Below are positions 7,783-64,000 of a stretch of 64,000 nucleotides of DNA, in pieces (the stretch's first letter is position 1; every line of letters begins with the position of its first letter). The position numbers and the translations under genes were made by a program. This stretch comes from Octopus sinensis (lineage: Eukaryota): contig NC_043005.1 of the NCBI RefSeq assembly GCF_006345805.1, forward strand, positions 5,642,001 to 5,706,000, in the 5' to 3' direction. A model generated the notes under the pieces. That model ran no database searches and had not been told where the DNA came from. It saw only the letters and a list, made by a program, of their open reading frames with translations.

Positions 7783-9578
7783 TATATATATATAAAACCT
7801 ACATGTATATACACACACATATATACACACATGGTGGCTGCCCCCTCGTTATCGAGTATGGCTATTGCACAAAGCTTAATCAATGTTGTTATCATGCAAT
7901 GCCTGTGCAAGAAGATTTTTTTTAAAGTGAGGAAAGGCTGTGCACTGAGTCAATCCCACTCACTAAGCAACAGCAGTCATAATCCGAAAAGAAGAACAAG
8001 TCAACATCATCGGTAACCACTGAGCCGCATGTTTTATGTCGGAGTTATCCCAGTTACCTGAGTTACCTTCTCCTAGAAGGATGCCCTAACAAAGGCTAGG
8101 AGTCCTTCACTCCCAATGGTTTAACCGCACAATTGGGTATTCAGTCCGATTATTTCTATGTCTCCGCGCATGATACAGCCTTAAGACATTTATTGGATGG
8201 CCGTTCACTCTCAAGAGTTCCTCCGCCCTTTCACGGGTTTTGTTTTTCATCCCGCAGGATGTCCAATAAACACCCTCTTCACCAAGCAAGCTTGGTGGGG
8301 TTGCCGGTTTAGTCACCGACAACCCGACCATGCAACAGGTTGTACTGGATTACATGTTACCAGTAGCACTCGAAAGTGACCTGACATACACACATATACA
8401 TACCTACATACACATACATATGTATATACATACATACACATATATATACACACACACAAATACACACAGATATCCCCTCCGGCTCACATGGCCCTGCACC
8501 TCCCCCCCACTATCATCATCCTCACCACCCAATGTCCATTTTCCATGTGGATATTAAACAACAATGATGGATGCATACACAAAGATATGGGTGTCTTATA
8601 TAAGATAAACCTATCTGTATGTATTCACTTTTCACACAAAAACTGCTGCCCGAAATGCTTCCATACTTGGGATGAATGAATAATTGGACCTCAGATACAT
8701 ACTATGGTCATCATTTTTTTATTAAAAATAAATAATATTGCTTTACATATATGATTCACTTCTTTAAAAAGGTTTCTCAATGTCAACTTCCAGTATTGAC
8801 ATAGCAACAGCAAAATATTCAGTTTTCATTTGCAAAATCTCTCACTCTCTATTTTAATGTTTTCATTTCAAGTTTTAATTCACTATTTTCAAACAACTAC
8901 AATAAAATCCTGAAAGAAGTATTTTCAAAGTTCCCAAATTTAAATATTTGGTACAAAATAGTTTTTAACAAGCTTTTATTTATATGATTTTTTTCATTTC
9001 ATGTTTATTTCATTCATTGTTTGCAGTGTTCTCTCTCCTCCTCCTTTCTCTCTCTCATACACACTGTGTCTCTAATATAAACATACACACACACACAAAC
9101 ACAGTCTCTCTAATATAAACACACATACACACACTCCAGGTTTGATTTTGTTATTACACAAATATCACATTGGAATTTTGCTATTCAACATGGAGCATCC
9201 AAGAAAATATGAACATTCTTTAATTAATTTCTGTAAATTTTTTTTATTTATTTACTTTTTGTATGTCGTGTTCAGCTCTATATATTTATAATCAGTTACA
9301 CACACACGTGTGTGTTTTTGTGCGTATGTTTGTACACATTTACGTATGTGTGAGTGTGTGTGAGAGAGAAAAAGTGTGCTGTCTAAGTGGCACTCACTCT
9401 TTCTCTCTCACACACACCCACACACACATGCACACATACATACGAAAAAGATGTAGGCTTATTTATTTATGAATGTACATATACATGACAACACACTTTT
9501 TCACTTGCACTCTCTCTCTCTTACTCCTTCACACACACACATACACACATCCATTTCATCTGATGTTTGATATTGTAT

Positions 9579-9719: not shown

Positions 9720-12160
9720 TGAGAACAATGTTCTCACTCTCTAGAAGAGGAGTCAGGGTAGATGTAGATGATCAGTATTCAACAGTGAAGCAAAGACGAG
9801 TACAGGTAGCCAGAGTCAATGTTGGATTCTGCAACTCTGTTAACTCTATCAAGTATGTTTTCAAATATGTAAACAAATGTTTAGATGCTGCAACATACAC
9901 TCTAATGCAAGAATGGCAGTCAGCAGATAAATAAAAATGACAAAGTTACACAATATGACAGAGGAAGACACATCAGTACCAATGAGGCTTTTTGGTGCAT
10001 CTTCAATTTTCCCATTCATGACAGGCACCCAGCCATCATTCATCTGACTGTCCATCTAGAGAATGGCCACAGAGGTATCTTTACAAAAAAACAGCCTTAT
10101 AACAAGCACTTTCTCCAAAAGGAACTACCCTTACTGCCTTTTTTTAAAGTTGTATTGAGTAGATGAAGATGCAAGAAAACTCTTTTACACACAATTACCC
10201 AAGTATTAGAAACAATAAATGGCACAAGAGGAAAGGTGGGGCTGATGCACTTGCAAAAGTTTACAGTGTCCACCCAAGCCAAGCAGAATGCTACTGCTTA
10301 CGCCTCCTTTTGCTTGAAGTACGTGGTCCGAAATCATTCCAAGATTCAAGGAGGGTAAATGGTTATGTGTGTGAAATTTATAGGGAAGCATGCTATCAAC
10401 AAGATTTTTTAGAAAATGATAAGCATTGGGACCTTGCATTGACTGAAGCATCAGTATCAGATTCTCCAAGGAAATTCCATAACCTTTTTGCAATTATACT
10501 GAATATGTGTCAACCTGGCAGTCCCCTACAGCTTTGGATAAAACATCATGAGTACATGGCCGAGGACTTAAAGTATGCAGTTCAACAGGGAAACCCAGAT
10601 GTCAATATTCACTTATCTGAAACAATTTTTAATCAAGCACTGATTGAAACTGAGGATCAAGTTTTGGCCATGGGAGGCAAAAATTCACAAGTGTCTGGCT
10701 CTGGACTGCCAAAAACAGACTGTTAAATTAGTGACTTAACTTCAAGAGACATAGCAAGAGACAAATTATGACATCTCAGAGTTGGCTGCATTTGTAAATG
10801 AACATGAATCTAAACTTCTTCCAGAACAAAGCTGTGCATATGATAAAATTATTTTGTCAGTGAGAGTAAAAAGTGGAGGAATTTTCTTTCTTGATGCTCC
10901 TGGTGGCACAAAGACATTTGTAACTACACTGCTTCTCTCCAAGGTAAGGCAACAAAAGAGAATTGCAGTTGCTGCAGCACTGTCTGGCTTTGCTGCCACC
11001 ATTCTCCCGGGAGGACGAACAGCTCATTCTGCTTTTAAATTACTGCTAAACCTGGTCACAACCGACAGTCCAGTTTGTAACATAAGCAAAGGTTCAAGTT
11101 TAGCAGAAGTGTTGAGCCAATGCCTCCTGATCATTTGTGATGAATGCACCATGTCACATAGAGGTGCAATAGAAGCCCTTGATAAGACCTTACAGGACTT
11201 AAGAGGCAACAATAAATCTATGAGAGAAATTACATTAATTTTATCAGGAGACTTCAGGCAGACATTACCTGTCATTCCAAGATGGACAAGATCCGATGGA
11301 ATAGAAATATGCATTAAGTCTTCAGAGCTATGGAATAAAGTATAGAAATTCTCCTTCAATACTAAGATGTGAGCTTCATTACATGGGGACCAATGTGCAG
11401 CACACTTTTCAACCTGACTCCTCTAATTAAGAACTGGGAAAGTACCATTTGATGGGAATGGTGATATTAGTTTGGCTCATATTACTATCATGGTAAATTC
11501 TGAAACTGAATTGAAGAACAGGGTATCTCTAGACTTAAGTAATAATCATAATACACGTGAATGGTTTTGTGAAAGGGCAATTCTCACCCCCAAAAATGAG
11601 ACAGTAGCAAGGATTAACCATGACTTAATAAAAAAGATTCCAACAGTCATTAAGGATTACAAATCTGTTGATTCGGTCCTTGATGAAAATCGAGCTGTCC
11701 ATTACCCAACAGAGTTCCTTAATTCCCTTGAGCCACCCAGAACTCCTTCACATAAACTTTTTCTGAAGGTAGGAGTCCTAATAATTCTTCTAAAAGATCT
11801 AGATCCTCTTAAATTATACAATGGGGCAAGGTTGATTGTGAAAACATTATCACCTAATGTGATAGAAGCTACCATTCTCACTGGATGTGCCTCTGGGAAA
11901 TAGGTTTTCATTCCAAGAATTCTAATCAAACCAACAGATATGCCATTTGAGTTCAAATGAACACAATTTCCAGTGGGACTTTGTTCTGCAATGTCTATTA
12001 ATAAAGCTCAAGGTCAGACTTGGAAATCTACTTGCCTGCGCTTAATTGAGACTTGCTTTTCTCATGGTTGTTAAAGGGTTGGTAGTTTACAAGACTTATT
12101 TGTCTATGCTCCAAACTAGAGAAGAAAGACTGTTGTTTTCCCAGAAACTCTTACATAATT
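9720..12160 (+). mobile_element. Degenerate Helitron Rep-helicase (PIF1-type helicase) fragment
   Basis: ORF pieces KYVFKYVNK; YCLRLLLLEVRGPKSFQD; FFLDAPGGTKTF (Walker A), GGRTAHSAFKL, IICDECTM (Walker B), SGDFRQTLPVI; ERAILTPKN, YPTEFLNSLEPP, LYNGARL; multiple stops and frameshifts. Confidence 0.92.
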
Positions 12161-13812: not shown

Positions 13813-13954
13813 ATGATGCATATATGTCTAGTGTATGTACATACATGTATATATATGTGTGTGTATACACACACACACACACACACACACACATAAAAAT
13901 AACTGTTTATCTTTTCTCTGACGTTTATCTTTATTTTCAAAAAAGTAAAAAGCT

Positions 13955-14097
13955 TATGATGTCAACAACGCAGTTGATAAGCATGGGAAATTACCCATCT
14001 GCTTTCTTCAATTACCCACTATATTCATTCTGAAGATATATTTAAAAGGACAGCACTACACATTTTGCTCCTGAATGCTTCACTAAACACAACCAAA
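13955..14097 (+). promoter_or_regulatory. Proximal promoter / 5' UTR of LPMO gene A
   Basis: TGATAA (13975-13980), GGGAAATTACCC (13985-13996), TATATTTAAAAG (14037-14048); the whole stretch is identical upstream of gene B. Confidence 0.6.
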
Positions 14098-14262
14098 ATG
14101 CTGTTGGTTTATTCTAGTTTGGTGTTTTACGCTGGTTTGTTTCTGGGTGTCGAAGGTCATGGTCGACTGATGGACCCTCCTTCCCGGTCTAGTATGTGGC
14201 GTTTGGGGTTCAAGACTCCAGTCAACTATGATGATATTGAGCTATATTGTGGAGGAATGGCG
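14098..14262 (+). CDS. LPMO gene A exon 1 (signal peptide + His1 region)
   Basis: caaaATG start; ends GCG|gtattt; 55 codons. Confidence 0.93.
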
Positions 14263-16602
14263 GTATTTATTTTCTATTTGTGTTTATCGTAAATCTTTTC
14301 TTTTATCAATAATTAATTAATGTATTCAGGAAAAAGCAAATAAACATTTTTTGTTTATTCCTAAATTTGTCTCATTTTAAATTGGTGTAGACTTTGATTT
14401 TGTTTATAATTTATTCTGCCTATTCATATTATTGATAATAATATGCATACATTTGTGTTATAATTGGATTCTGTGTCTAGAATTCTTTTTTTATAATGAT
14501 AGCCAATATAAATGTTGGTTTGATGCTTGTTTGCTTTCTCCAGTCATGTTTTTATATTATATATAGAGAGAGAAAGCAAGAAAGCAAAAGATAGAGAGTG
14601 AGTTAACATAAGTGAAGCAGGATGAGTGTGCATACTAGGCTTGTTAGCAAGCAATGAGTAAAAGAATGCTACAGAGAGAGAGAGAGAGGAGTGAGAGAGA
14701 ATGGTAGAGAGAGAAGAGAGTGTATGAGTAAATAACACTAGTTATGGGAGATGTTGCACAAATGAGAAATTAATTTTGTTTAATTTTATTTTAAGGTAAC
14801 AGATATTTTCCCTTTGAAAATTAATATTCATTTCATTATTTTGTACAAACGCAAAGAAATTTGGTAAAAGTTAGATTATAATTACTGTCTGTATGCCATA
14901 TTACCCACAGCAACAAAAGTTACCCATTACAGCACGTTTTATGATGATTAATGTCATCTTTTTTTTAATCATTTCAACAGCATCAATGGACATTTAATCA
15001 TGGAAAATGTGGAATATGTGGTGATCCTCATGAAGGCCCACGAGCGAATGAAGCAGGTGGTAAATATGCAACTGGAATCATCAGTCGTTATTATCATAAA
15101 GACCAAATCATTACAGTCGATGTTGACTTGACCACCAACCATTTAGGCTGGTTTGAGTTTCGCTTATGTCCAAACAACAATGTAAAGAAACCTGCTACCC
15201 ATGAATGCCTGAACAAATATCTTCTCCGACTGGCCAATGGCAATGGAACTAGACTTTATATTGGTCAAAAAAAGGGACATATTTTTACGAAACTAAAATT
15301 ACCAGCTGGTCTTACTTGCTCTCAGTGTGTTTTCCAATGGAAATACCATACAGGTGAGATGCTGTTTGATTAAAAGTTTTGTGTGTCTGACAGTTATTGC
15401 ATTATTACTTCATTCTTCAATTCTTTAAGTCCCTTAACTCTTGCTCTGTGATGCTCACTATTGCATAATATAAAAATGCTAGTAGCAGTACTTAACCATA
15501 CCTGGGTACAAAGAAAGTTGCACTGCCCACAACATTCTCTCTGAAAAAGACATGCCTGTCATCATCATTGTTTTAACATCCACTTTTCCATCCTTGCATG
15601 GATAAGATGGAATTCATGAAGGCAGATTTTCTATAGCTGGATGCTCTTCTTGTCACTTACCTTTGCCTGTTTCTAAGCAAGATGCTATTTTTCCATGACC
15701 AGATATGTTTTCATGGAAAATTAGAAATGAATGACATTGCTTGTATGATGGTGATTGTGACACTTGTTTACAACTCTCATGCAGTATTGAAAAAAAAAAA
15801 ATAGGGAGTAAACATGCACACACTCACACACATTATATAGCCATAGAAATCTTGCCAAAGCAGACACAGCTCTCAGTGTAGTTGGATCCTGTCTAACCTA
15901 TGTCACCATGGAACATAGACATTAAATGATGATAATGATAGCCTTCTCTCATCATCATCATCATCATCATCATCATCAGTGTTTAATATAAAAACACGGC
16001 TGAAGGTGTGTATGAGGGGGGCATACAACTTGGGACTCAGTACTGGATTGACGTTTCATTTATCTATCTTGTAAAGATGGAAGGTAAAGTTGGCCTCAGT
16101 GGATTTGCATTCAAAGTACCAGAATGACTACAGCAAAGCAATTTATTTGTTGCTTTAATAATGCAGCCAGTTTACCAACTTTGTATTTTACACTATTAAA
16201 CATTTAAAATTTTAAATAATTGATTGTGCTTTTCCTTATACTTTTTTATTAGGGAACACATGGGGTGAAGGTAATAAATGTGTTGGAATGGGATGTTCAG
16301 ATGCACAAGAAGAATTCTACGGCTGTGCTGATATAGCTATTTTGAACAAAGGTGCACCAATTCCATCAACAATACGACCACGAACTCGCAGACCTCATGT
16401 CAGCACTTCAAGATCAGGCCACATGAAACATTCCACAAGCCATCGAAGACCATCAACACAAAGTCCAAGACGTTCTACAAGTGTCCCTCAAAAGTTCAAG
16501 AATTGTCACGCTATTGGTGCCTGGGCTGGTATCTATGATAATTGGTGCAAAGACTTCTGCCCAAAAGGAAGCTGCCCCAAAAATATGTGTCGTTGTGCCT
16601 GA
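14098..16602 (+). CDS. Secreted AA15-family lytic polysaccharide monooxygenase, gene A; join(14098..14262,14981..15353,16253..16602), 295 aa
   Basis: 888 nt open after GT-AG splicing (phases 0,1). Signal peptide MLLVYSSLVFYAGLFLGVEG then His1 (HGRLMDPPSRSSMWR); CGICGDP, NEAGGKYATG, second His in LTTNHLGWFEFRLC (His89), QWKYHTGNTWG, QEEFYGCADI (Glu179-x-Phe181); basic linker; 6-Cys C-terminal module. Confidence 0.95.
14981..15353 (+). CDS. LPMO gene A exon 2
   Basis: tttcaacag|CATCAATGG ... CATACAG|gtgag; 373 nt; encodes HQWTFNHGKCGICGDP...QWKYHT. Confidence 0.95.
16253..16602 (+). CDS. LPMO gene A exon 3 (catalytic C-terminus, linker, 6-Cys module)
   Basis: cttttttattag|GGAACACATGG ... TGA at 16600-16602. 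Confidence 0.93.
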
Positions 16603-23053: not shown

Positions 23054-23922
23054 CAAGCTGTACCTTGAAATCAAGAGGACAGATCCTGTTGTCTACAGCT
23101 CTTTCCTGCAATCAGACCTGGACACAATGCAGCAATGGATCACAGACTGGCAACTGAAACTGGCTGTGGACAAGTGTACCACCATGCATTTTGGGAGAAA
23201 AAACCCTGCGTCCACATACTCCCTCCACAACACTGATATCAAGAAATCCTTTTGCGAGCGTGACCTAGGCATCACTGTCAGCAGTGATTTGCGTTGGACA
23301 AAGCATATCTCTAAAATTGTCAAGAAGGCCAAGGGTGTCTTGGCATCACTCAGCAAGACTTTTGTTAGCCGCTCTCCAGCCATCTATTTAAAACTGTATA
23401 CAGCTATGGTACGACCACACTTGGAATTCGCATCATCAGTTTGGAACCCCTATCTTGCTCAGAACATTGACCTCCTGGAATCTGTTCAGAGACGTGCAAC
23501 CAAACGCATACCCTCCATCAGACACCTACCATATACTGAGCGCCTTGTTTCCCTGGGCATGGATTCACTGAAGCTCCGGCGTCTTGCGACGGACTTGGTA
23601 AGCGCCCACAAAGTTGTCAACCACCTCACCAATAACAACACTGAACACCTTTTTGATCTCCATGTGTCTAACACACGTGGACATGCCTACAAAATCAGAA
23701 AACAACACAGCTCCCATGACTTTCGGAAACATTTCTTCACGCTCAGAGTTGCTGAAGCATGGAATAAACTGCCTGCGTCAGTTGTTGACTGCCATGACAC
23801 TGCATCCTTTAAGGCCCTCATGCTTTCCGAAATCCGTCGAAACTACACCTGATTATATATGCACTTTAGATGAATTGTAGTGCACCTGAGCACTGTACAC
23901 AATGTTTATTATTATTATTATT
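23054..23922 (+). mobile_element. 5'-truncated CR1-like LINE (RT C-terminus, (ATT)n tail)
   Basis: LQSDLDTMQQW..KCTTMHFG..ERDLGI..LYTAMVRPHLEFASSVWNP..LESVQRRATK..RRLATDL..TRGHAYK..FFTLRVAEAWNKLP; frame intact to the stop at 23852; sibling of 49025-50664. Confidence 0.92.
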
Positions 23923-24636
23923 AAAATGTGATCTGTTACAGATATCATTATCAAGCGTATTACAAGTTAATCCTTAGACTCAGTTTTTAACAGCATAACA
24001 GTGCTAATAAGAATGATTATAACAATTAGTGAGCCACATAAAACTTACACATTTTAATCATCATTTTTAATCTGTTTTGATGCAAAATTTTACAAATTAT
24101 TATAACATTGGTTCATTATGCTACAAATTTCAAATATGTCTGCATTGTCATTCCATAGTTAAGGATGTCTAAAGTGTAACATTTGAACTTGTTTTATGTT
24201 AAAGATTTTGATTATGCTTTTTATTTCATTCCATGATTTAAGGTTGTGAAAGATGTTTCACTTGACCACACAAACGCTGTGAAAAGCAGAATTATAGTTT
24301 CTGATTTAGGCACAAGGCCAGCAGTTTTGAGAGGAGAGCTTTAGTCAATACCATGAGTCCCAATACTAGTTTGGTACTTTATTTTATCGACCCCAAAAGA
24401 ATGAATGGCAAATTTGATCTTGGCAGGATTTGAACTTGGAATGTAAAGTGCCAGAACAAATACCATAAATGATTTTTTTTCTGATGTTCTAACATGAGAA
24501 GCAAAATAATATATAGGTTAACAGTACCCATCAAGATTCAAGGTCCATTTTGTGCTACGATGTTAGTCATAAACACCCCATTCACTAATAATATCTAGTC
24601 ATTTCCTTTATGATTCTTTGATTAATTTCCAGGAAA

Positions 24637-32566: not shown

Positions 32567-32709
32567 TATGATGTCAACAACGCAGTTGATAAGCATGGGA
32601 AATTACCCATCTGCTTTCTTCAATTACCCACTATATTCATTCTGAAGATATATTTAAAAGGACAGCACTACACATTTTGCTCCTGAATGCTTCACTAAAC
32701 ACAACCAAA
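32567..32709 (+). promoter_or_regulatory. Proximal promoter / 5' UTR of LPMO gene B
   Basis: Identical to 13955-14097 (offset 18612): TGATAA 32587-32592, GGGAAATTACCC 32597-32608, TATA-like element. Confidence 0.6.
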
Positions 32710-32874
32710 ATGCTGTTGGTTTATTCTAGTTTGGTGTTTTACGCTGGTTTGTTTCTGGGTGTCAAAGGTCATGGTCGACTGATGGACCCTCCTTCCCGGT
32801 CTAGTATGTGGCGTTTGGGGTTCAAGACTCCAGTCAACTATGATGATATTGAACTGTATTGTGGTGGAATATCG
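32710..32874 (+). CDS. LPMO gene B exon 1
   Basis: caaaATG; ends TCG|gtaaat; 55 codons. Confidence 0.93.
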
Positions 32875-33673
32875 GTAAATTATTTTCTATTTGTGTTAAT
32901 CTCAGTCCCAGTTCTTTCCTTTATGCTTAAATTTGTTTGTTTTACTAAATTCTAGACATCACAATATGCAACTGTATGGATGCAATTAACATTGGATAAG
33001 ATGAGTCTCTGTCATCAGGGTAGAGAAGATCTTACATTTCAGATCTTAATGCAGAGAAGTTCAAGATCCTGGTTCAAGCAAACAATATTAAATGATAGGG
33101 AACATAAAGATTTGTTTAAGATAAACAATTATACAACATTAAGATCTGAAATGTTAAGATCTCTTCTAGCCTGATGATGGAGGCTCATCTCGTCCAATGT
33201 TCATTGCTTTCATTATGGTTCATTGCTTCCATTACTACATCTACCAACATTATTATGGATTTCCAATCCCCCAGAAACAGCTGTTGGACTTATAACACTT
33301 TTCTTCCCTTCCTTTCATTTTCTTTGTCATTTGTACTTTATGTAAGTTGGATCTATTAATATAAATATATTTATACTTAAAAATTCATCATCAGAAAGTC
33401 TTCACCTTTTGCTTTCTCTTGTTATGCATGAATACATATATTTGTATTTTGTAGTTCATACCAAACTATTATATTTAATATATCTAATATATGTAATATG
33501 TCTAATTTGTTTATCTGTATAATTGCTTCTATACTTGCTCAACTTGATTCTTCTTATAGCCTTTCTTTATCTTAGGGAATCAATCTTCTGCAAACACATT
33601 AGAGTCTAAGTTTGAATCTTTTGAGCACTACTAAGTTTCATCTATACAGAGAATCTGTGGATCTCATCTGTGG

Positions 33674-33720
<47 letters not shown>

Positions 33721-36700
33721 ACATCCTCATCCTCCTCATCATCATCATTTAACATCTGTTTTCCATGCTGACATGGGTTGGATAATATTTTAATGATGTT
33801 CTAGTCCTTCACTAAAGTGAAGGTGCAATAAACATGTAAAATGCTTAAAAGTTCATTGGAGAAAAATGAAATTTTCATGATCTTGAGTATAACATACTAT
33901 CCTCATTTTTGTCAAAGTCCATTAAAACAAAGAATACAGAAAAGATTCTGAATATTAGATTTACAAAAGATTGAGCAACAGGTATCTTCTGAAGTTGATC
34001 TGGTTGACCACACCACTACCTAATCCAGGTATTAGCAAAGTGGTCTATGTTGACCCCTGGGAATCTGTGTGGCAGTCCATGAGTTCATAAACACCTGAAA
34101 CAATTTTGAACGTTAAGGGTACTGAATCATTATCAATATAATTTGACTGAACTTTTATTGTTCTTTATCAATTTCGCTAAGTATTTTCATTAAATTTCTT
34201 TAAATATTTCTTATTAAAAAGCAGTAATGGCACAAAAGAATGAAGGAATTATTGTTTTTAAATCAAGAAATTTTTTATTAATAATATTTGTTAATTTTGT
34301 TCTAGAAATTTAAACCATGGGGGTTAATAAGTTATTAATGATTCCATGAAGTGGTCAGTGGCATAAAAAGTTTGCCAACCTTTGGCATAATAAAAATAAT
34401 TAATTACCTGACTTTTTATATCTTTTTATTATTTATAGCGTCAATGGGAAAAGAATCATGGAAAATGTGGAATATGTGGTGACCCTTATGATGGCCCAAG
34501 AGAGAACGAAGCAGGTGGTAAATATGCAACTGGAATCATCAGTCGCTATTATCATAAAGACCAAATAATTACAGTTGATGTTGACCTCAAAAACAACCAC
34601 CTGGGTTGGTTTGAGTTCCGCTTGTGTCCAAACAACAATGTAAAGAAACCTGCCACACAAGAGTGCTTGGATAAATATCTTCTCCAACGTGCTGATGGTA
34701 GTGGTAGTCGTATTAAAATTGGCCGAAAGACTGGCCATATTTACACCAAGTTAAGGTTGCCAGCTGGTCTCACCTGTTCTCAGTGTGTCCTCCAGTGGAA
34801 GTATCATACAGGTGAGGTTTTTAACATAACTTTATTTCTCTTTCTCCAAGTCCCAACTAGCCATCAGTACTTAGTAATTGAGCTGGTTGGCAACCAACCA
34901 ATTTCCTAATATCAATAATCTGTGGCCAGTGTTTACCTCCAGTTTTCATAGCATTGAGCTACAAACGAGATGTTAATCATACCCTGGATTGAACACTGGT
35001 CTACAACTAATAGATTTACACACAGAAGGAACTGAACTCAGTATTGCTGCAAGCTAACTACTCGTTTGTATATTACCAGTAATGCTGCTACTTGTTCTTA
35101 GTCTACTGTACTCCTATTTACAGCTAGTATGACTGAACCATTTGAAAATTAAGTGTTTTGGTCACAGTTATAATGAAGGGTCTATGATAGGAAATGAAAG
35201 GACAACATATCAACTAGTTGTCTGCTGCCCTGTCTTCACAGCCATCTACACTCTCTTAGAATAACTGTCTTATTATTATAACTGTTTCTTAGGCAGTGAG
35301 CTGGCTGAAGAGTTAGAACCTTGGAAAAAATGCTTTCCAGTATTTGATCCAGCTCTTTCCATTCTATGTTCAAATACCATCAAAATTAATTTTAACTTTC
35401 ATCTTTTCAGGGTTGATAAAATAATGTACTAGTCTGTTCTGGGAGCAATGTAATCAACTAAACTCCACTACTTCCATTAAAATTGTTGGCCTTGTGTCTG
35501 AATCAGAAACCATTATTAAGGCAGCAATGTGGTAAAATCATTAGCAACATTTCTTTCAGCTCTTTACATTCTGAGTTCAAATTGCACTAAGGTTAACTTT
35601 GCCCATCATCCTCTCAGGTTGATAGAATAATGTATCAGTCTAGAAATGGAGTTGGTGTAACTGACTAACCAATGCTCCCCTTAAAATTGATAACTTTCAG
35701 AAGGAACTAAAAAGAATTATTGTAATTTTTGTTAAGCAAAATAATTAGTGCATCAGAGAAAATGCCTTGGGGAATTCTTTCCAGCTCCTTCTATTCTGAG
35801 TTCAAATCATACTGATGTCAACTTTGACTCTCATCCCTCCAGGGTCAACAGAATAAAATACCGGTCTAGCACTAGGGTCAATGATATCCGTTAACTCCCC
35901 TTTCCACAAAACTGCTAACCTTGTGCCTAAATTAGAAACAATTATTATTATTATTGTTTCAACTTTGAAGATGAGAGAGATGTATCTGATTGCATTTAGG
36001 ATTCAGTGGTTTATATTATATCATCTGTGCTGTGCTTACATTCTGTGTTAAGAGGCAAAATATTTCTATATCCAAAAGAGAGGACAAAGAATTGAGATAA
36101 GTGGTGCATTGCTGTACTCAAGAAAACCTGTCCACTACAACAAAACTGATATCCTAAATTCAAGGTGCTGCATAAAAAGCACTGGTGCTGGTACCACATA
36201 AAAAGCATTGGTGCTGATGCCACATAAAAAGAACTGGTGATGGTGCCATGTAAAAAACACTGGTGATGGTACCACATAAAAAGCACCTAGTATAGTGTTA
36301 AGTGGTTGGCATTAGGAAGGGTACCAAGCAGTAGAAACCAAGCCAAAAACAGACAATGGAACTTGGTGCCGCCCCTGGCCTTGCCAGCTCCTGTAAGCTG
36401 TCCAACCCATGCCAGCATGGAAAACAGATGATGGCAATGATGATGATGATGATGATGAGGAGGAGGAGGAGGAGAAGGAGGATGAATAACTGATATAAGT
36501 GTTGGTTGGTTGATTTCTCCAGTCAAGCTTCACATCATGTAGAATGAAAGTAAAAGAGGGGTACAAAGAGAGTCAACCTAAGAGATACAAGTAACAAAGG
36601 GCCTCTTGCTCAGAGTGAAAGGTAGACTGTATAATGCATGTGTGCAAACAGCCATGCTACATGGCAGTGAAACATAGGCTAGCATGAAAAACATATGTTA

Positions 36701-38915
36701 AACAATGATGATGATGATGAATATGATAAGCTTGGTGTATGTAAAGGAACACTATACATACACAGTAAGAAAGAAATAAACTTGGGGAGGAGGGGGAGAA
36801 GGAGGTGGAGAAGGGGGAAAAGGTGGAGGAGGGGGACTGAATTTTGTGTTTTTCTTACATGCTGTTTAACTAATTATTTAATTGTCAAATTATATCACAT
36901 GCATGATTAGAAAGTTGAGCCAGTTCAGTTTGGTCATAGTTTCCCCAAATGTAACAGTGAAATTCTATCAAACAGTAGTGAGAACAGAACCTTGTACCTT
37001 GGTGTTCATTCCTGCATTGTTGTTCATATAGTGGTTGTTTAGATAATTATTGCTAATTATTTAATTCTGTTTGTAGCATAATCAAGAGGATGATACAGAA
37101 ATGTGTGCTTTTAAAAGAGGTAGAATGTAGGAAGAAAGAAATAGAATTTTTCTTCCCCCATCAATGTCTTATGGTTGAAGACTGGTTTCTGTCATGCTAT
37201 AATTGGTTATTAAGATGAGATACATGAGACCTCAACATTGCTTCCTTCAAATAAGAACTTGAGCTTTACACTGCATGTTGACAAAATACTTTCTTAGGTA
37301 AACTTACAATATCTTCTGGTACAATTTTACAACCAAATGAACTAGGCTGCTAAGCAAGTATCTTGTTTATGGATACAATATAGTATAGCCTTAATGACAA
37401 AATGCAAACAGCTGATGTTTGACATCTCTGATGCTCTGACATCACATTCCATTCAGCAGTCATCTGAAGGTCCTCATTCAATAGAAAGTAACAAACAAAA
37501 TAGTACTTTACTTTAAAACATTAGTCACTGAAATATAGTTAAATAATACTCAATATTTGATATTAAAGTGTATAAGTGAAATAGAAAAATGTCTACATGT
37601 GTAGTAGACTGATGAAACTTGAACTACACTTTTATTACTAGACAAGTGACCATCAATTATACTACAGAGTATCTCTGATACTTGGCAGATGTTTTATTTT
37701 ATTGAGCTAGGAGAGATGAAAGGCAAAGTTGACTTCAGTGGGATTTAAACTTAGCTGAAATAATGGTTCCTGATTTAGGCACAAAGCCAACAATGTCGAG
37801 GGGAGGGTATTAGTCAATACCATCAATTCCAGTACATGACTGGTACTTTATTTTATTGACCTTGAAAGGATAAAAGTAAAGTCAACTTCAGTGAGATTTG
37901 AACTTAGAGTGTAAAGAGCTGGAAAAAAACAGCAAAGTATTTTTTCTGATACTCTTACAATGCTGTCAGCTTGATACCTTAACACCAGCTCAGTAATAAT
38001 AATTCTTACTAATTTTGGCACAAAGCCAGCAATTTTGAGGGAAAAGGGAAGTCAATTCTATCAACCTAAGCAATTGACTGGTACTTTATTTTATCTATCT
38101 CAAAATAGATGAAAAGCAAAGTCAGCCTCAACCAAATTTGAACTCAGAATATAATGAGTGGGAAGAAATGCTGCAAAGTATTTTCTTAACACTCTAACAA
38201 TTCTGTTGGCTTGCCTGATTAATCATTCTTAAATTAGTTATTGTCATTTGTTTCTGCTATTTTAACTGCAATAATTCATCTCCTCAAGATATGTCAGATA
38301 GTGCTAGCAAGATAGGTTATTCTTCTAATATGCAATGTAGTGAGTAGTTCCTACTTTGGTTTGATTTTACAAGAAAAATCTCATGAACTGGATAATGAAT
38401 AATGATTGATAACTGCTTTGAGAACCTGCCAGTGAGCCTGTTTGTCTTTGGTGTTTCCAGTCGGTACTTATTGTAATGTCAGATTAAAATATTAACATAC
38501 TGACTGAGAAAAACACGTAAAAAATATATAATCTTGTAAATGAATATAAAAATAAATTAAGAAAAACATAAAAATATATTTAAAGAACTGCCTTTTTTTA
38601 GGTAACACATGGGGTAAAGGCGATAACTGTGTTGGAATGGGATGTTCTGAAGCACAAGAAGAATTCTATGGTTGTGCAGACATAGGCATCTTGGACAAAG
38701 GTGCACCAATTCCGTCAACAATACGTCCACGAACTCGCAGACCTCATATCCGCATCACTACCAGCCATGTACGAAAACCATCACAGCCTACAAGACGCCC
38801 TGCAAGCTTCAAGAATTGCCATGCTATTGGTTCCTGGGTTGGTATCTATGATACCTGGTGCAAAGATTTCTGCCCAAAAGGTAGCTGTCCATCAAATATG
38901 TGTCGTTGTGACTGA
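32710..38915 (+). CDS. Secreted AA15-family lytic polysaccharide monooxygenase, gene B; join(32710..32874,34439..34811,38602..38915), 283 aa
   Basis: 852 nt open after GT-AG splicing, same exon phases and lengths as A except for a 12-codon-shorter linker. Signal ..GVKG|His1; LKNNHLGWFEFRLC (His89); QEEFYGCADI; C-terminal CHAIGSWVGIYDTWCKDFCPKGSCPSNMCRCD. Confidence 0.95.
32982..33207. repeat. Inverted repeat (about 70-bp arms) in gene B intron 1, MITE-like
   Basis: 32982-33051 versus 33137-33207 are reverse complements (agatgag.ct...tcatcagg.tag..agatctt.acatttcagatcttaatg), with an 85-bp spacer. Confidence 0.85.
34439..34811 (+). CDS. LPMO gene B exon 2
   Basis: tttattatttatag|CGTCAATGG ... 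CATACAG|gtgag; 373 nt. Confidence 0.95.
35290..35950 (+). mobile_element. Three head-to-tail decayed SINE copies in gene B intron 2
   Basis: Three repeats of ttct.a.gttcaaat...acttt...catc...gg.t.a.a.aataa..tac; junctions at short attatt tracts. Confidence 0.7.
36165..36460 (+). mobile_element. RTE-type 3' UTR copy with internal 26-bp tandem repeat
   Basis: cataaaaagcactggtgctggtacca-like unit x4.5 (36171-36287), then gtggttggcattaggaaggg...ccatgccagcatggaaaacagatgatg. Confidence 0.75.
37670..38215 (-). mobile_element. Cluster of about 3 decayed SINE copies in gene B intron 2
   Basis: Repeated gatgaaa.gcaaagt..acttcagtg.gattt.aact and ggcacaaagcca motifs. Confidence 0.65.
38602..38915 (+). 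CDS. LPMO gene B exon 3
   Basis: cttttttttag|GTAACACATGG ... TGA at 38913-38915. Confidence 0.93.
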
Positions 38916-49024: not shown

Positions 49025-50664
49025 ATGTACCATCTTCACCATCACTAACAGCAAACTCCATAACAACTATGGAATTTACACCTGCAATGCTGCGACGTCA
49101 CCTTCAAAATAAGCGCAACTATGCCTCCCCTGGTCTCGATGGAGTTACATACCTGCTTCTCAAACGTGGCAGGCACTTCCTTTTACACCAGCTTTCTATT
49201 TTCTTCCAGTACTGTCTCAACAATGGTGCTACTCCGGAGCAGTGGAAAACTGCCAGTGTCATTCCTCTGTTCAAAGAGGGTGACCGCACATCACCTGTCA
49301 ACTATCGCCCAGTCAGTCTCACTAGCTGTATTGCAAAACTGATGGAATCGTGTGTCAGAGAAACACTCTGGAACTTCTGGAGCTCTCACAGTCTCATCTG
49401 ACCCTCACAATATGGATTTGTCCCTAACTCCAGCTGCAGTGACCAGCTTGTCGAGTTCCTTGAGGACATTACTCAGATCACTGACAGTGGCTCATGGGTG
49501 GATGTTGTCTACCTTGACTTTGCTAAGGCTTTCAACTCTGTGCCACACAAAAGGCTTATGGTGAAACTCTCTGCAATGGGTGTGGGGGATGACCTTTTTA
49601 ACTGGTTGAAATCCTTCATCCTCAGCCGAAAGGAGGTAGTCACAGTTCTAGGACAGCACTCTATACCATATGAGATGTCATCGGGTGTACCACAGGGATC
49701 TGTCCTTGGTCCCCTCCTGTTTGTGGCATACATTAATGACATAGATGCCAATTTAAAGAATGCCACAGTATTGAAATATGCAGACGACATCAAGCTGTAC
49801 CTTGAAATCAAGAGGACTGATCCTGATGTCTACAACTCTTTCCTGCAATCAGACCTAGACACAATGCAGCAATGGATCACAGACTGGCAACTGAAACTGG
49901 CTGTGGACAAGTGTACCACCATGCATTTTGGGAGAAAAAACCCTGCGTCCACATACTCCCTCCACAACACTGATATCAAGAAATCCTCTTGCGAGCGTGA
50001 CCTAGGCATCACTGTCAGCAGTGATTTGCGTTGGACAAAGCATATCTCTAAAATTGTCAAGAAGGCCGAGGGTGTCTTGGCATCACTCAGCAAGACTTTT
50101 GTTAGCCGCTCTCCAGCCATCTATTTAAAACTGTATACAGCTATGGTACGACCGCACTTGGAATTCGCATCATCAGTTTGGAATCCCTATCTTGCTCAGA
50201 ACATTGACCCCTGGAATCTGTCCAGAGACGTGCAACCAAACGCATACCCTCCATCAGATACCTACCATATTCTGAGCGCCTTGTTTCCCTGGGCATGGAT
50301 TCACTGAAGCTCCGGCGTCTGGCGACGGACTTGGTAAACACCCACAAGGTTATCAACCACCTCACCAACAACAACACTGAACACCTTTTTGATCTCCATG
50401 TGTCTAACACACGTGGACATGCCTACAAAGTCAGAAAACAGCACAGCTCCCATGACTTTCGGAAACATTTTTTCACGCTCAGGGTTGCTGAAGCGTGGAA
50501 TAAACTGCCTGCATCAGTTGTTGACTGCCATGACACTGCATCCTTTAAGGCCCTCATGCTTCCCGAAATCCCTCGAAACTACACCTGATTATATATACAC
50601 TTTATCTAAAGTGTAGTGCACCTGAGCACTGTACACAATTATTATTATTATTATTATTATTATT
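49025..50664 (+). mobile_element. CR1-like LINE, longer 5'-truncated sibling of 23054-23922
   Basis: ASPGLDGV..WKTASVIPLFKEG..NYRPVSLTS; in-frame TGA at 49399-49401; DFAKAFNSVPH..SGVPQGSVLGPLLF..YADDIKL; 1-bp deletion near 50208; (ATT)n tail to 50664. Confidence 0.93.
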
Positions 50665-60741: not shown

Positions 60742-61102
60742 AAGACAGCTCATGCCGTCAAACACAAGAAATTCATTTATAATACACAACGGAGTCAGAC
60801 ATCTTAGAGTTCATGTATAGTTGATATATAGTTCATGTATAGTTGATATATAGTTTGAAGTATATGTTCAAAGTGTTCAATGCAGTGGCCCACGGTGGCG
60901 ATACGTATTCAATACAAAAAACAGATCAAAGTGGTGGAAAGCGGTCAATACAGAAGATTGATGTTTCCGAAAGAGCGAGGAATTCATTTTTACCTTAAGC
61001 AAATGTGATGACCCATGGTGGATGTTCGCTGGGTGGTTCTAATGAGTTTTTGTGAAGTGCTCGGTTTTATAATGCTTGTTAGGTGGTCAATCCAGCGTAG
61101 CG

Positions 61103-61528
61103 TGACGTCATCAACGTTTTGACCAATCGTTTCGTTAGGTGGCTTTAGTCAAGTAGAACGGGACGTCATCATTATTTTGACCAATCGCTGCATTATAACT
61201 GCCTCTTGTTTGTTTCCTGTTTTGACCAGTCGCTTCGTTAGTCAAGTAGAACGGGACGTCATCATTATTTTGACCAATCGCTGCATTATAACTGCCTCTT
61301 GTTTGTTTCCTGTTTTGACCAGTCGCTTCGTTAGTCAAGCAGAACGGGACGTCATGCAGATTCTGCCCAATCACGACTTATAGCTACATTAGATCTGCCC
61401 CCTGTCTGTACTTGTTAGGTGACTATTCAAGCAGAAAAGGACGTCATCAATATTCTGACTAATGACTGTCCCCTGTTTGTATCCTGTCCATTCTAGCTGA
61501 GCTAGACGTCATCAACTTGTTGACCAAT
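61103..61528. promoter_or_regulatory. Six GACGTCA-N12-CCAAT (CRE-like + CCAAT box) modules
   Basis: GACGTCA at 61104, 61162, 61255, 61348, 61440 and 61505; CCAAT (CTAAT in the fifth) exactly 19 nt downstream of each start. Confidence 0.7.
61145..61355. repeat. 93-bp tandem repeat, about 2.3 copies
   Basis: The unit tcaagtagaacgggacgtcatc...cgcttcgttag starts at 61149, 61242 and 61335; the first two units are identical. Confidence 0.95.
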
Positions 61529-64000
61529 CAGAATCGGGTCTGAACCTTAGCTGTATCGTATGTATCAGGGTCAGATTTGCACGAAAGAATTTTTTTCCTT
61601 TTTTACTTAGGCATATTTCCGTCAGAGTGAGTGTCTGTTTGAAGTAGCGGCCGTGGTGGAATTTTGCTTCTCCTTTTCGGAGGACTTATCTTTTGTTTTA
61701 GTATTCCTGGCCCAGGGTGTTTAAACTTGGTCTAAATTTTTTTATGAAATATAGTTCTTTATTTTGGCGTTGTATGAAGGTTGCGTTGTCACTGAATTTA
61801 TAGAGCGGGTTAGTTGTAAATTTCGGATTTACATTTCCAGCACATCTATCTATGTGTCCGCTGACCGGTATTTTGCGGTAATCAGGGTTTCTAATTTGTG
61901 ATTTATGCACCGCCATCCTGTTACGTAAGCTATTTTTTGTATGGCCTATATACTGCCTATTGCAGCCTGCGCATGTTATGACATAAATTAAGTTTTCTGA
62001 TGCGCAGGTGAAGTTTGTTCTAATGGTGAACTGGTGGCCTTGTTCCAGTATAAATTCTGATCCTTCTTTCAAGATGACACAGATTCCGCAGTTGGGCCTT
62101 CCACATTTTCTAACTGCTGGTTTTGTGGTTGATGTTGAGTGCAGTGTAGCTTGGGTTAAAATCCTTTTCAAGGATTTTGGATATATATATATCCACTCAC
62201 ATACATGCATGTGCACGTGCACATACACCTCTCTCTCTCTCTCTTTCAAATATATATCATCTGTGGCTCATATATCCAAAAAAGAAGCCAGAGTTCTATA
62301 TAAATGGGAGCAGACAATGCAAGCTTTTTATAGCAGAGCGAGCAAGGATCCTTAAAAATTCATGGGACCTGGAATCTCTCTTGAACACAAGACATGAGAT
62401 CTATAGTTCCTGCCCCCATTTCAAACTCTACCTGCTGCAGGCTTGGGAGTCCCTGTTTGTCGATTAGAGCTGAAAAAAGTCCTTGCAGACCAGAAACGAG
62501 TGGTGATTCACTGTTAATCCTTTGGGTCCATACGATTTGTCATCCGGACTGGTCTAAGGGAGATAACTCAATCTGTTTAAAGCTCCATCAGTGTATATTA
62601 TTCTTGGTTTATAAATTAACTGACTGCAACGGTTTTCTACTTTCAGTTAGAAGAGAGATTATATGCCCTCTGTCATTAGAGTCTCACGAGTTGTCTATAA
62701 ATCTAAGCGCTTTATAGATGCAAAATCATTGGTCACTCTATGATCAGACATATGTTTAACTGCATGTGTGTGTATATATATATATATATATAGTTTCTGT
62801 ACATGTGGTTGCTCAAAAGACTTTGAACAGAATAAACCTAACCACACATGCCCACCCTCTCACTCACTCGAATAAATGTTAACAAAGCAATTTTGTATGT
62901 ATATTTCAATTTGCCCTATCTTAGTGGGTTTACAGCCAGCTTTGCACACATATCGTTCAACTTCCTTCCATACATGTGTATCCAGGGGAAAAAAATAATA
63001 ATTTTCATGTTTTGGGTCCGGTAATAAGTACAAACAAAAATAAATATTAATCCAAAATATGAACATATGATTTTAATCGTCAGAAGTTACAAAAGTAATT
63101 CAAGCACCAAGAGTTTCGTGCATGGCACTTATCAAACTTTAAGAAGTGCCCGTGTACGATACTCTCAATCCTTAAGTCACTTTGTAACTTCTGCCAATTT
63201 AAAATTTTGTTAAATGTTTGTAATATATATATATATATTATCCAAAGTGTACAGTATTATATATCCATCATGGATATGTACATTTCAAATAATATAGCCA
63301 CTCTATCGACAGATATATCAGTGCATCTTTTTCCTGATTTATGGACATGTAGATGACTTACCTGTGTATGTGTGTGTAATGAATATGCATTTTACCAACA
63401 AATGTATAAAACCATTTCATATGCTAAATAATAAAAAAATACCTATAGTTTTTGTTTTATTAGCTAACCATGTGTGTTACAATGATCATAAATCTATAGG
63501 CAACCTTCTTATTGCACATTATCTCACACACAAGCAATGTGTTTCACATGTTGCTCATGCTGGTAGATGGAAACTAAAACAATAAATGGAGTGAGTGAGA
63601 TGGTGAATTGCAGTGACAGGTTTTGCTCTGAACTCGCTGGTATTCAAAATGGACTATCTTTCGGAGATGGTACATGATACCATTCATCCACATGTAGCAA
63701 GAATATTCAGTAATCACAGATGTCGTGATTCTCTGGAATGTTGCCCACATGATCAATGAATATGACCAATTGCAACTTCACCAGGAAAGAATATTACCCA
63801 CATAATCAACAATATCCAGCCAATCATGAGTTCACATGGAATAGGCTCCAGTGACCCATATCAATTTCTGGTGCGCGCCTTTTGGAGTCTCTCAATTGGT
63901 ATAAAATGAAATACACATGCGACACCACCCAGAAAGTTTTGGAATGTAGCAGAAAGAGCATGAGACAAGGTACGTGGATGGTGAACAGAGACGGCAGAAC

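What the first reader, a model, noticed from the sequence alone, without database searches (positions are those of the whole stretch)
13955..14240. Promoter + exon 1 almost identical between otherwise diverged LPMO paralogs (gene-conversion tract)
Seen: 13955-14240 equals 32567-32852 with no indels and 1 mismatch in 286 bp (GAA/AAA, Glu/Lys in the signal peptide). It covers 143 bp of non-coding sequence, ends abruptly 22 nt before the exon-1 donor, and is followed by 5 differences in those last 22 nt. Exon 2 differs at 22 of 124 residues and the introns are largely unalignable. Inference: recent interlocus gene conversion has homogenised the regulatory and secretion module while the catalytic surfaces diverge, forcing co-expression of two enzyme variants.
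Basis: partly seen in the sequence, partly recalled or inferred. Interest (0 to 1): 0.7.

Follow-up and report, generated by a model that had tools for sequence, protein, structure and literature searches.

The report
Gene-conversion island in octopus LPMO pair
Two old, neighbouring chitin-oxidase (AA15 LPMO) genes of Octopus sinensis share an almost identical 286-bp stretch (proximal promoter, signal peptide, first 27 residues of the enzyme) because that stretch has been repeatedly copied from one gene to the other; this is a clean but ordinary case of gene conversion between tandem duplicates.

Summary
Window 13955-14240 equals 32567-32852 with one mismatch (14152 G / 32764 A). The other alignable parts of the two genes differ at 17.8% of sites (P about 3e-23).

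The window is Octopus sinensis. The genes are intact tandem AA15 LPMO paralogs, LOC115215838 (A) and LOC115215892 (B), with exon 2-3 dS of 0.67.

O. bimaculoides has both orthologs and the same tract with the same boundaries. Inside the tract, all informative sites (4 substitutions and one 3-bp indel) group the copies by species and none group them by ortholog. Outside it, 101 sites group by ortholog and 1 by species. Between species the tract diverges by 3.2%, against 4.5-5.1% for introns, so constraint cannot explain the identity.

At least two homogenising events are needed. One occurred at or before the sinensis/bimaculoides split. A recent one occurred in the sinensis lineage and covers at least 13961-14139.

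The non-coding part holds two blocks conserved in Argonauta: a 32-nt GATA/kappaB-like block and a TATA-like block. It therefore looks like a real promoter.

Co-expression of the two genes and divergence of their "catalytic surfaces" remain untested; omega is 0.12-0.30. This is a new member of a known kind and of modest interest.

The parts
13955..14240 (+). Converted tract, copy in gene A (143 nt of promoter/5'UTR plus codons 1-47 and 2 nt of codon 48)
   Evidence: 285/286 identical to 32567-32852. In the comparison with O. bimaculoides, informative sites group by species.
32567..32852 (+). Converted tract, copy in gene B
13961..14139 (+). Minimum extent of the most recent (sinensis-lineage) conversion. 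It is bracketed by the outermost sites at which both sinensis copies differ from both bimaculoides copies.
   Evidence: Species-grouping sites are 13961, 13968-13970 (3-bp indel), 13972, 14062 and 14139.
14152..14152 (+). The single A/B difference (G in A, A at 32764 in B; Glu19/Lys19). It is derived in B of O. sinensis, because A of O. vulgaris and both bimaculoides copies have G.
13974..14005 (+). 32-nt promoter block conserved in Argonauta hians (29/32). It contains TGATAAG (GATA-type motif, 13975-13981) and GGGAAATTAC (kappaB-like, 13985-13994). The same block in B lies at 32586-32617.
   Evidence: Local alignment score 49 versus shuffle mean 17.4, sd 2.3, maximum 26. Coordinates. The motif names rest on consensus recalled from memory.
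14040..14052 (+). TATA-like block ATTTAAAAGGACA at -58 from the ATG. It is identical in Argonauta, where it lies at -70. The same block in B lies at 32652-32664.
   Evidence: The transcription start about 25-30 nt downstream is inferred, not observed.
14098..14262 (+). Gene A (LOC115215838) exon 1: signal peptide codons 1-20 (14098-14157), His1 codon at 14158-14160, phase-0 donor GCG|GTATTT.
   Evidence: The spliced product is 100% identical to XP_029641028.1.
14241..14288 (+). 3' shoulder: the exon-1 tail (5/22 differences, all paralog-specific and shared with O. bimaculoides) plus the first 26 nt of intron 1 (14267-14288 is 21/22 identical to 32880-32901).
14981..15353 (+). Gene A exon 2
16253..16602 (+). 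Gene A exon 3, including the stop codon
32710..32874 (+). Gene B (LOC115215892) exon 1
   Evidence: The spliced product is an exact match to XP_029641103.1.
34439..34811 (+). Gene B exon 2
38602..38915 (+). Gene B exon 3, including the stop codon

Best explanation
A and B are old, intact, head-to-tail AA15 LPMO paralogs lying 18.6 kb apart in Octopus sinensis. A 286-bp island at their 5' ends evolves in concert through recurrent short-tract non-allelic (interlocus) gene conversion. The island holds the proximal promoter with GATA/kappaB-like and TATA-like blocks, the 5'UTR, the signal peptide, the copper-binding His1 and the next 26 residues.

The inferred mechanism is that a break in one copy is repaired using the paralogous copy as template. 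This overwrites non-coding, synonymous and non-synonymous sites alike.

A first event, at or before the O. sinensis / O. bimaculoides split, erased roughly 50 expected differences and set the boundaries. A second event, recent in the sinensis lineage, re-homogenised at least 13961-14139.

After the first event the island became the only stretch of near-identity between the loci: the longest identical run elsewhere is 38 nt. Later events are therefore confined to it, which keeps the edges sharp.

The consequence is that both genes carry the same proximal promoter and the same secretion/N-terminal module, while exons 2-3 keep paralog-specific sequence under purifying selection.

Shown: the tract, its significance, the phylogenetic discordance, the near-neutral between-species rate, and the promoter conservation. 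Inferred: the molecular repair pathway, homology-limited confinement, and co-regulation.
For: 1. The tract is 285/286 identical against 17.8% divergence elsewhere, with no permutation out of 20,000 reaching it.
2. Synonymous and non-coding sites are homogenised: 0 of 33 synonymous sites and 0 of 143 non-coding sites differ, while dS is 0.86 in exon 2 and 0.48 in exon 3.
3. Four-taxon site patterns against O. bimaculoides (L002 and L003):
   - Inside the tract: 4 substitutions plus a 3-bp indel group by species, 0 group by ortholog. Singletons are As 0, Bs 1, Ab 5, Bb 4.
   - Exon-1 tail, exon 2 and exon 3: 101 sites group by ortholog, 1 by species, 1 the third way.
4. The tract is not unusually constrained. 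Orthologs differ at 9 of 283 sites (3.2%) against 4.5-5.1% in intron 1. Tract dS between species is 0.13 (A) and 0.03 (B), against about 0.10 elsewhere.
5. d(Ab,Bb) = 9 while d(As,Bs) = 1. With a single old event the Poisson P(<=1 | 9) is about 0.001, so a second event is required.
6. Both flanks stay paralog-specific, which indicates a double exchange (conversion), not a crossover.
7. Both genes are intact and under purifying selection in two species.
8. The promoter blocks are conserved in Argonauta.
Against: - There is no read-level evidence that the two O. sinensis copies are assembled and polished correctly. The extreme figure of 1 difference could be slightly exaggerated by short-read polishing.
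- The B copy of O. vulgaris could not be retrieved, so the last event cannot be dated relative to the sinensis/vulgaris split.
- Only two species carry both copies in my data, so the count of events rests on 5 informative characters.
- The 5' edge abuts sequence with no significant A/B homology. That is awkward for a classical two-ended homologous repair model, and the first event could have been a non-homologous replacement.
- The direction of transfer is unknown.
Confidence: 0.85

Rival explanations
1. Ancient purifying selection (an ultra-conserved promoter and exon 1) keeps the two copies identical without any sequence exchange.
For: Parts of the tract are truly constrained. A 32-nt block and a 13-nt TATA-like block are conserved in Argonauta, and the encoded N-terminus with His1 is conserved across AA15.
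Against: The tract differs by 3.2% between O. sinensis and O. bimaculoides orthologs, which is close to the intron rate of 4.5-5.1%. The differences include synonymous and non-coding changes and a 3-bp indel. These changes are shared by both paralogs within a species. Constraint cannot produce species-specific shared changes.
Confidence: 0.02
2. The identity is an assembly or polishing artefact: cross-mapped reads homogenised two similar segments in the O. sinensis assembly.
For: No reads were available to me. A 286-bp near-identical segment is short enough for 150-nt reads to cross-map during polishing, which could erase a few true differences.
Against: The same tract with the same two boundaries is present in an independent assembly of another species, O. 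bimaculoides, with 9 differences between its copies. A of the independent O. vulgaris assembly matches A of O. sinensis at 283/286. The flanks on both sides are unique and paralog-specific, so long reads anchor each copy. An artefact could at most change 1 difference into a handful; it could not create the pattern.
Confidence: 0.04
3. The founding event was a one-off non-homologous replacement. In this reading a 286-bp promoter/exon-1 segment was re-duplicated from one gene into the other (template switching or a similar process), rather than copied by homology-driven conversion. Only the later event was conversion.
For: The 5' edge abuts sequence with no significant A/B similarity. The boundaries are identical in two species and therefore stem from a single old event.
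Against: The 3' shoulder (22 nt of exon plus 26 nt of intron) is still 80-85% similar and collinear. Before homogenisation the conserved promoter blocks would have offered homology within the tract. The second event is in any case homology-dependent. The two models predict the same present-day sequence.
Confidence: 0.1
4. Unequal crossing-over, that is, birth and death of hybrid genes in the tandem array, rather than conversion.
For: The genes are tandem and in direct orientation.
Against: A crossover would make everything on one side of the breakpoint identical. Here both the upstream flank and exons 2-3 remain paralog-specific and orthologous across species. The copy number is two in both species.
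Confidence: 0.02

Closest known systems
Concerted evolution of tandem duplicates by short-tract interlocus gene conversion. Classic cases recalled from memory: the 5' halves of the human fetal globin genes HBG1/HBG2, and the Drosophila Amy duplicates including their 5' flank. For the primate LHB/CGB cluster see PMC2478647 and PMC2954307, which were listed but not read.
   Same: The paralogs are tandem and in direct orientation. A bounded tract is far more similar than its flanks. Non-coding and synonymous sites are homogenised. The paralogs group by species inside the tract and by orthology outside it. The events recur.
   Different: The tract is very short (286 bp) and limited to the proximal promoter and most of exon 1, in genes that are otherwise as diverged as dS 0.67. 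The same edges are kept in two species. The organism and the gene family (cephalopod AA15 LPMO) are new for this phenomenon as far as my literature searches show.
Secreted-protein gene families with a conserved signal-peptide exon and a diverged mature region (conotoxins, amphibian antimicrobial peptides, mammalian beta-defensins; recalled from memory)
   Same: The 5' secretion module is nearly identical among paralogs, while the rest of the protein differs.
   Different: In those families the mature part is typically under diversifying selection. Here exons 2-3 are under purifying selection (omega 0.12-0.30). The identical segment also includes the catalytic His1 and the promoter.
AA15 lytic polysaccharide monooxygenases (Thermobia domestica TdAA15A, PDB 5MSZ; Sabbadin et al. 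2018, PMC5823890)
   Same: There is a signal peptide followed directly by His1. The second brace histidine and ten cysteines are present. Sequence E-value is 7e-52 and the model has a TM-score of 0.91 to 5MSZ.
   Different: The axial position is Phe (as in chitin-active TdAA15B and most AA10), not Tyr184. There is a C-terminal Ser/Thr/Pro/Arg-rich linker and a 6-Cys module. Activity is untested.

Membership tests
Interlocus (non-allelic) gene conversion / concerted evolution | A bounded tract is significantly more similar between paralogs than the rest of the alignable sequence | tested here: met
   The tract has 1 difference in 286 nt against 17.8% elsewhere. The longest run with at most 1 difference is 286 nt, against a maximum of 119 in 20,000 permutations.
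Interlocus (non-allelic) gene conversion / concerted evolution | Phylogenetic discordance: paralogs group by species inside the tract and by orthology outside it | tested here: met
   Inside the tract: 4 substitutions plus one 3-bp indel group by species, 0 by ortholog. Outside: 101 sites group by ortholog, 1 by species.
Interlocus (non-allelic) gene conversion / concerted evolution | Silent and non-coding sites are homogenised, and the tract is not unusually conserved between species (excludes constraint) | tested here: met
   0 of 33 synonymous sites and 0 of 143 non-coding sites differ between the paralogs. Orthologs differ by 3.2% in the tract against 4.5-5.1% in intron 1.
Interlocus (non-allelic) gene conversion / concerted evolution | Both flanks retain paralog-specific sequence (conversion, not crossover) | tested here: met
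   The upstream flank is unalignable between A and B but 90-96% identical between orthologs. The exon-1 tail has 5 of 22 paralog-specific sites shared across species.
Interlocus (non-allelic) gene conversion / concerted evolution | Both copies are physically verified by reads that span the tract and its unique flanks | not testable with these tools
   No read data were available. The only indirect support comes from the independent assemblies of O. bimaculoides and O. vulgaris.
AA15 LPMO | Signal peptide followed directly by an N-terminal histidine (His1 of the histidine brace) | tested here: met
   The sequence reads MLLVYSSLVFYAGLFLGVEG|HGRL. H21 is invariant in a 60-sequence alignment and aligns to His1 of 5MSZ. 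The feature is defined in PMC5823890.
AA15 LPMO | Second copper-binding histidine (His91 of TdAA15A) | tested here: met
   Precursor H109 (mature H89) aligns with His91 of 5MSZ and is invariant in alignment A1.
AA15 LPMO | Axial Tyr (Tyr184) or Phe | tested here: met
   F201 aligns with Tyr184 and is conserved in at least 90% of the homologs. PMC5823890 reports axial Phe in the chitin-specific TdAA15B type.
AA15 LPMO | Ten conserved cysteines in the catalytic domain, and the AA15 fold | tested here: met
   I counted ten Cys in mature residues 1-190 of the sequence. The AlphaFold model (mean pLDDT 83) matches 5MSZ with E = 1.3e-23, TM-score 0.91 (normalised to the target) and 47% identity. Pfam LPMO_10 matches at 7e-21 (A) and 2.5e-19 (B).
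AA15 LPMO | Copper-dependent oxidative cleavage of chitin or cellulose | not testable with these tools
   This needs expression and an activity assay.

The most novel reading that the evidence does not exclude
The island is not just a self-perpetuating by-product of homology. On this reading it is selectively maintained. Conversion events that keep an identical GATA/kappaB-like promoter, signal peptide and His1 N-terminus would be favoured because the two AA15 enzymes must be made and secreted together, for example as a complementary pair acting on different chitin forms in prey digestion or in immunity. Tracts that spread into exons 2-3 would be purged. The sharp edge shared by two species would then be a selection boundary.
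Probability: 0.12. Interest if true: 0.5.

Novelty: new member of a known kind. Interest (0 to 1): 0.3.

Why it matters
This is a tidy, well-delimited natural example of concerted evolution confined to a promoter plus signal-peptide and N-terminal module, in paralogs that are otherwise anciently diverged. It has a datable older event and a recent one.

Practical consequences:
- Exon-1 or promoter sequence cannot be used for orthology assignment or for paralog-specific expression assays of these octopus LPMO genes.
- Short reads in this stretch will multi-map.
- The tract pinpoints a compact 143-bp candidate promoter, with a block conserved from Octopus to Argonauta, for an animal LPMO whose biology in cephalopods is undescribed.

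It does not change what is known about gene conversion.

Tried and rejected
- **O. vulgaris B copy.** I tried to fetch its DNA to date the last event. The annotated gene is fused to MCT12 and spans more than 100 kb, so no DNA was returned. L004 ends about 6 kb short of it.
- **Independent read assemblies.** I searched the protein collection with the genomic ORF that contains exon 1, hoping for read-assembly contigs from octopus sequencing runs. There were only 3 distant hits. L005 and L006 come from unrelated invertebrates with short introns and gave nothing useful.
- **The second high-identity repeat.** I considered that 23054-23923 / 49791-50659 (96%) was another conversion tract. I rejected this: it carries a reverse-transcriptase-like ORF and is absent from the orthologous site in O. 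vulgaris and O. bimaculoides, so it is a lineage-specific LINE fragment.
- **A third LPMO copy or other copies of the tract in the window.** None were found.
- **Mapping A/B differences onto the substrate-binding surface.** Model coordinates are not exposed to scripts, so this was not done.
- **Literature.** I searched for the gene IDs, for cephalopod LPMOs and for octopus gene conversion in this family. Nothing was found.
- **Polarising the species-grouping sites with Argonauta.** They fall outside the alignable blocks, so the direction and lineage of each change remain unresolved.

Full report
**Observation**

An ungapped comparison shows that window 13955-14240 and 32567-32852 are identical at 285 of 286 positions. 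The one difference is 14152 G versus 32764 A, which is Glu19/Lys19 at position -2 of the signal peptide.

Identity stops dead upstream of 13955. The 500 nt upstream give a local alignment score of 26, against a shuffle mean of 21 and a maximum of 29. Downstream, identity changes at 14241. The last 22 nt of exon 1 carry 5 differences. Only the first ~26 nt of intron 1 still align.

A self-BLAST of the window finds homology between the two loci only at exon 1, exon 2 (81%) and exon 3 (77%). A tblastn search finds just these two LPMO copies.

Over 995 alignable sites with 127 differences, the longest run with at most one difference is 286 nt. The maximum in 20,000 permutations was 119. At the outside divergence of 17.8% the probability is about 3e-23.

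**What the genes are**

Splice sites and reading frames give two intact three-exon genes on the + strand:
- A: 14098-14262, 14981-15353, 16253-16602 (295 aa).
- B: 32710-32874, 34439-34811, 38602-38915 (283 aa).

A is 100% identical to Octopus sinensis XP_029641028.1 (LOC115215838). B is an exact match to XP_029641103.1 (LOC115215892).

Both proteins match Pfam LPMO_10. A matches the Thermobia AA15 structure 5MSZ at E = 7e-52, aligned from His1. An AlphaFold model (mean pLDDT 83) superposes on 5MSZ with a TM-score of 0.91.

The defining AA15 features are present:
- His1 follows the signal peptide directly.
- The His91 equivalent is H109.
- The axial position is Phe201, the chitin-type variant described in PMC5823890.
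- There are ten cysteines in the catalytic domain.

A basic Ser/Thr/Pro-rich linker and a 6-Cys C-terminal module follow the catalytic domain.

**Age of the duplication**

Between A and B, exons 2-3 have dS 0.67 and dN 0.12. By exon, dS is 0.86 in exon 2 and 0.48 in exon 3. Introns and flanks are unalignable.

O. bimaculoides has orthologs of both genes: P0121 at locus L002 and P0125 at locus L003.

The single Argonauta hians homolog is about as far from A (82% identity) and B (86%) as A is from B (83%). The duplication is therefore about as old as the octopod families, or older.

Both genes are under purifying selection between species, with omega 0.21 for A and 0.17 for B.

**The decisive test**

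I aligned the tract from A and B of O. sinensis, A of O. vulgaris (L004), and A and B of O. bimaculoides.

O. bimaculoides has the same tract with exactly the same two edges. Its copies differ at 9 of 283 sites.

Site patterns inside the tract:
- 4 substitutions (13961, 13972, 14062, 14139) and one 3-bp indel (13968-13970) unite the two sinensis copies against the two bimaculoides copies.
- No site unites A with A and B with B.
- Singletons are 0 (A sinensis), 1 (B sinensis), 5 (A bimaculoides) and 4 (B bimaculoides).

Site patterns immediately outside:
- All 5 differences of the exon-1 tail are paralog-specific and shared across species.
- In total, 101 sites in the tail, exon 2 and exon 3 group by ortholog, 1 groups by species and 1 groups the third way.

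This is the classical signature of concerted evolution.

**Constraint is excluded**

Orthologs differ by 3.2% in the tract. That compares with 4.5-5.1% in intron 1 and 4-10% in the upstream flanks. Synonymous divergence in the tract codons between species is 0.13 for A and 0.03 for B, similar to the ~0.10 of the rest of the gene. The tract therefore changes at close to the neutral rate over time, yet its two copies stay alike within a species.

**Number and timing of events**

- A single event before the species split cannot give species-specific changes shared by both copies. It would also predict about 9 differences in O. sinensis, where 1 is seen (Poisson P about 0.001).
- A single recent event in O. 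sinensis cannot explain why the bimaculoides copies differ by only 3.2%.

The most economical history has two events:
1. The first occurred at or shortly before the split. It explains why no ortholog-grouping sites survive and why d(Ab,Bb) is about equal to the ortholog distance.
2. The second was recent, in the sinensis lineage. It spread the donor copy's ~5 accumulated changes to the other copy. It demonstrably covers 13961-14139. Its 3' end lies anywhere between 14139 and 14240.

The G/A at 14152 is derived in B of O. sinensis. It is either a mutation that arose after the conversion or a site lying just outside the second tract.

A of O. vulgaris differs from A of O. sinensis at 3 tract sites, all derived in O. 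vulgaris. Without the O. vulgaris B copy, which was not retrievable, the last event cannot be placed before or after that split.

**What the tract contains**

The 143 non-coding nt hold two blocks that are conserved in Argonauta hians at the equivalent place upstream of its ATG:
- A 32-nt block at 13974-14005, 29/32 identical. Its alignment score is 49 against a shuffle mean of 17.4 (sd 2.3, maximum 26).
- ATTTAAAAGGACA at 14040-14052, which is -58 from the ATG in Octopus and -70 in Argonauta.

The first block contains TGATAAG, which fits the GATA-factor consensus. Four nt further on it contains GGGAAATTAC, one base away from a kappaB-type decamer. These motif names rest on consensus recalled from memory and are leads, not tests.

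The sequence upstream of the tract in A or B shows no similarity to Argonauta. The tract starts 19 nt upstream of the first conserved element, so it spans what looks like the proximal promoter.

The coding part gives the 20-residue signal peptide, His1 (14158-14160) and mature residues 2-27. It is therefore not purely a "regulatory and secretion module", because it includes half of the copper site.

**Mechanism**

The best explanation is recurrent non-allelic gene conversion between tandem direct repeats. Two-sided boundaries with paralog-specific flanks exclude unequal crossover.

After the first event the island became the only long stretch of identity between the loci. The longest identical runs elsewhere are 38 nt in exon 2 and 21 nt in exon 3. 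Later homology-dependent events are thus naturally confined to the island. This explains stable, sharp edges without invoking selection.

The 3' shoulder (14241-14288, about 80-85% similar, all differences paralog-specific) may be the remains of original or still older homology.

One unresolved point is that the 5' edge abuts sequence without detectable A/B homology. The founding event could therefore have been a non-homologous replacement. Present-day sequence cannot discriminate between the two.

**Artefact**

I had no reads. However, the same tract in an independent assembly of another species, and the near-identical A copy in the independent O. vulgaris assembly, rule out an artefactual origin of the pattern. 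Polishing could at most have removed a few true differences in O. sinensis.

**What is not supported**

- "Catalytic surfaces diverge": exons 2-3 show ordinary purifying selection, and I could not do a surface mapping.
- "Forcing co-expression": sharing a proximal promoter makes similar expression plausible. No expression data were found, and distal elements differ completely.

**Novelty and interest**

Short-tract conversion that homogenises the 5' end of tandem duplicates is a well-known phenomenon. I found no description of it for cephalopod LPMOs. This is a new, clean member of a known kind, useful mainly as an annotation and orthology caveat and as a pointer to a compact candidate promoter. 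Interest is about 0.3.

Noticed in passing
window 23054-23923 and 49791-50659: These two 870-bp segments are 96% identical and carry a 265-aa ORF that looks like the C-terminal part of a LINE reverse transcriptase. The copy at 23054-23923 is absent from the orthologous site in O. vulgaris (L004) and O. bimaculoides (L002). It is therefore a lineage-specific retroelement insertion, not part of the LPMO duplication.
   Followed up: partly
window 61087-61529: Six copies of a ~93-bp unit are present; two of them, at 61145-61355, are 99% identical. Each unit carries GACGTCAT (CRE-like) and TTGACCAATC (a CCAAT box). This may be the promoter region of the downstream monocarboxylate-transporter gene. 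None of that gene's coding exons lie in the window.
   Followed up: no
window 13868-13893: A (CA)13 microsatellite lies about 60 bp upstream of the tract in gene A only. It is present in the A orthologs of O. vulgaris and O. bimaculoides and absent upstream of B. Simple repeats next to conversion tracts have been discussed as recombination-prone (from memory). No test was made.
   Followed up: no
window 14267-14288 vs 32880-32901: The first part of intron 1 is 21/22 identical between the paralogs, although the exon tail just before it has 5/22 differences and the rest of the intron is unalignable. The one difference is paralog-specific in both species. This could be a remnant of an older, longer homogenised tract, or an intronic splicing element.
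   Followed up: partly
L001 (Argonauta hians) 8854-9062 vs 11607-11815: A 209-bp piece of the Argonauta LPMO exon 2 is duplicated about 1 kb upstream of the gene's ATG at 97.6% identity. It is an isolated partial-exon copy.
   Followed up: partly
O. vulgaris annotation (P0122, P0127; L004): The O. vulgaris gene models look wrong here. The A model starts at Met32 inside exon 1 (263 aa). The B model is fused to monocarboxylate transporter 12 (722 aa, range over 100 kb) with a doubtful first exon. As a result, the 90% protein cluster that holds B is represented by a transporter, and B does not appear in homology searches.
   Followed up: partly
window 13975-13994 (and 32587-32606): A GATA-type motif (TGATAAG) and a kappaB-like decamer (GGGAAATTAC) lie 4 nt apart. 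Both are conserved in Argonauta. Paired GATA and Rel sites are typical of insect immune and gut gene promoters (from memory). This hints at how cephalopod AA15 genes might be regulated.
   Followed up: partly
L005 1777-2771 and 3510-4351: A read-assembly contig (SRR23967709) from an unidentified invertebrate carries two tandem AA15 genes with very short introns. This suggests that tandem AA15 pairs are common outside cephalopods.
   Followed up: no
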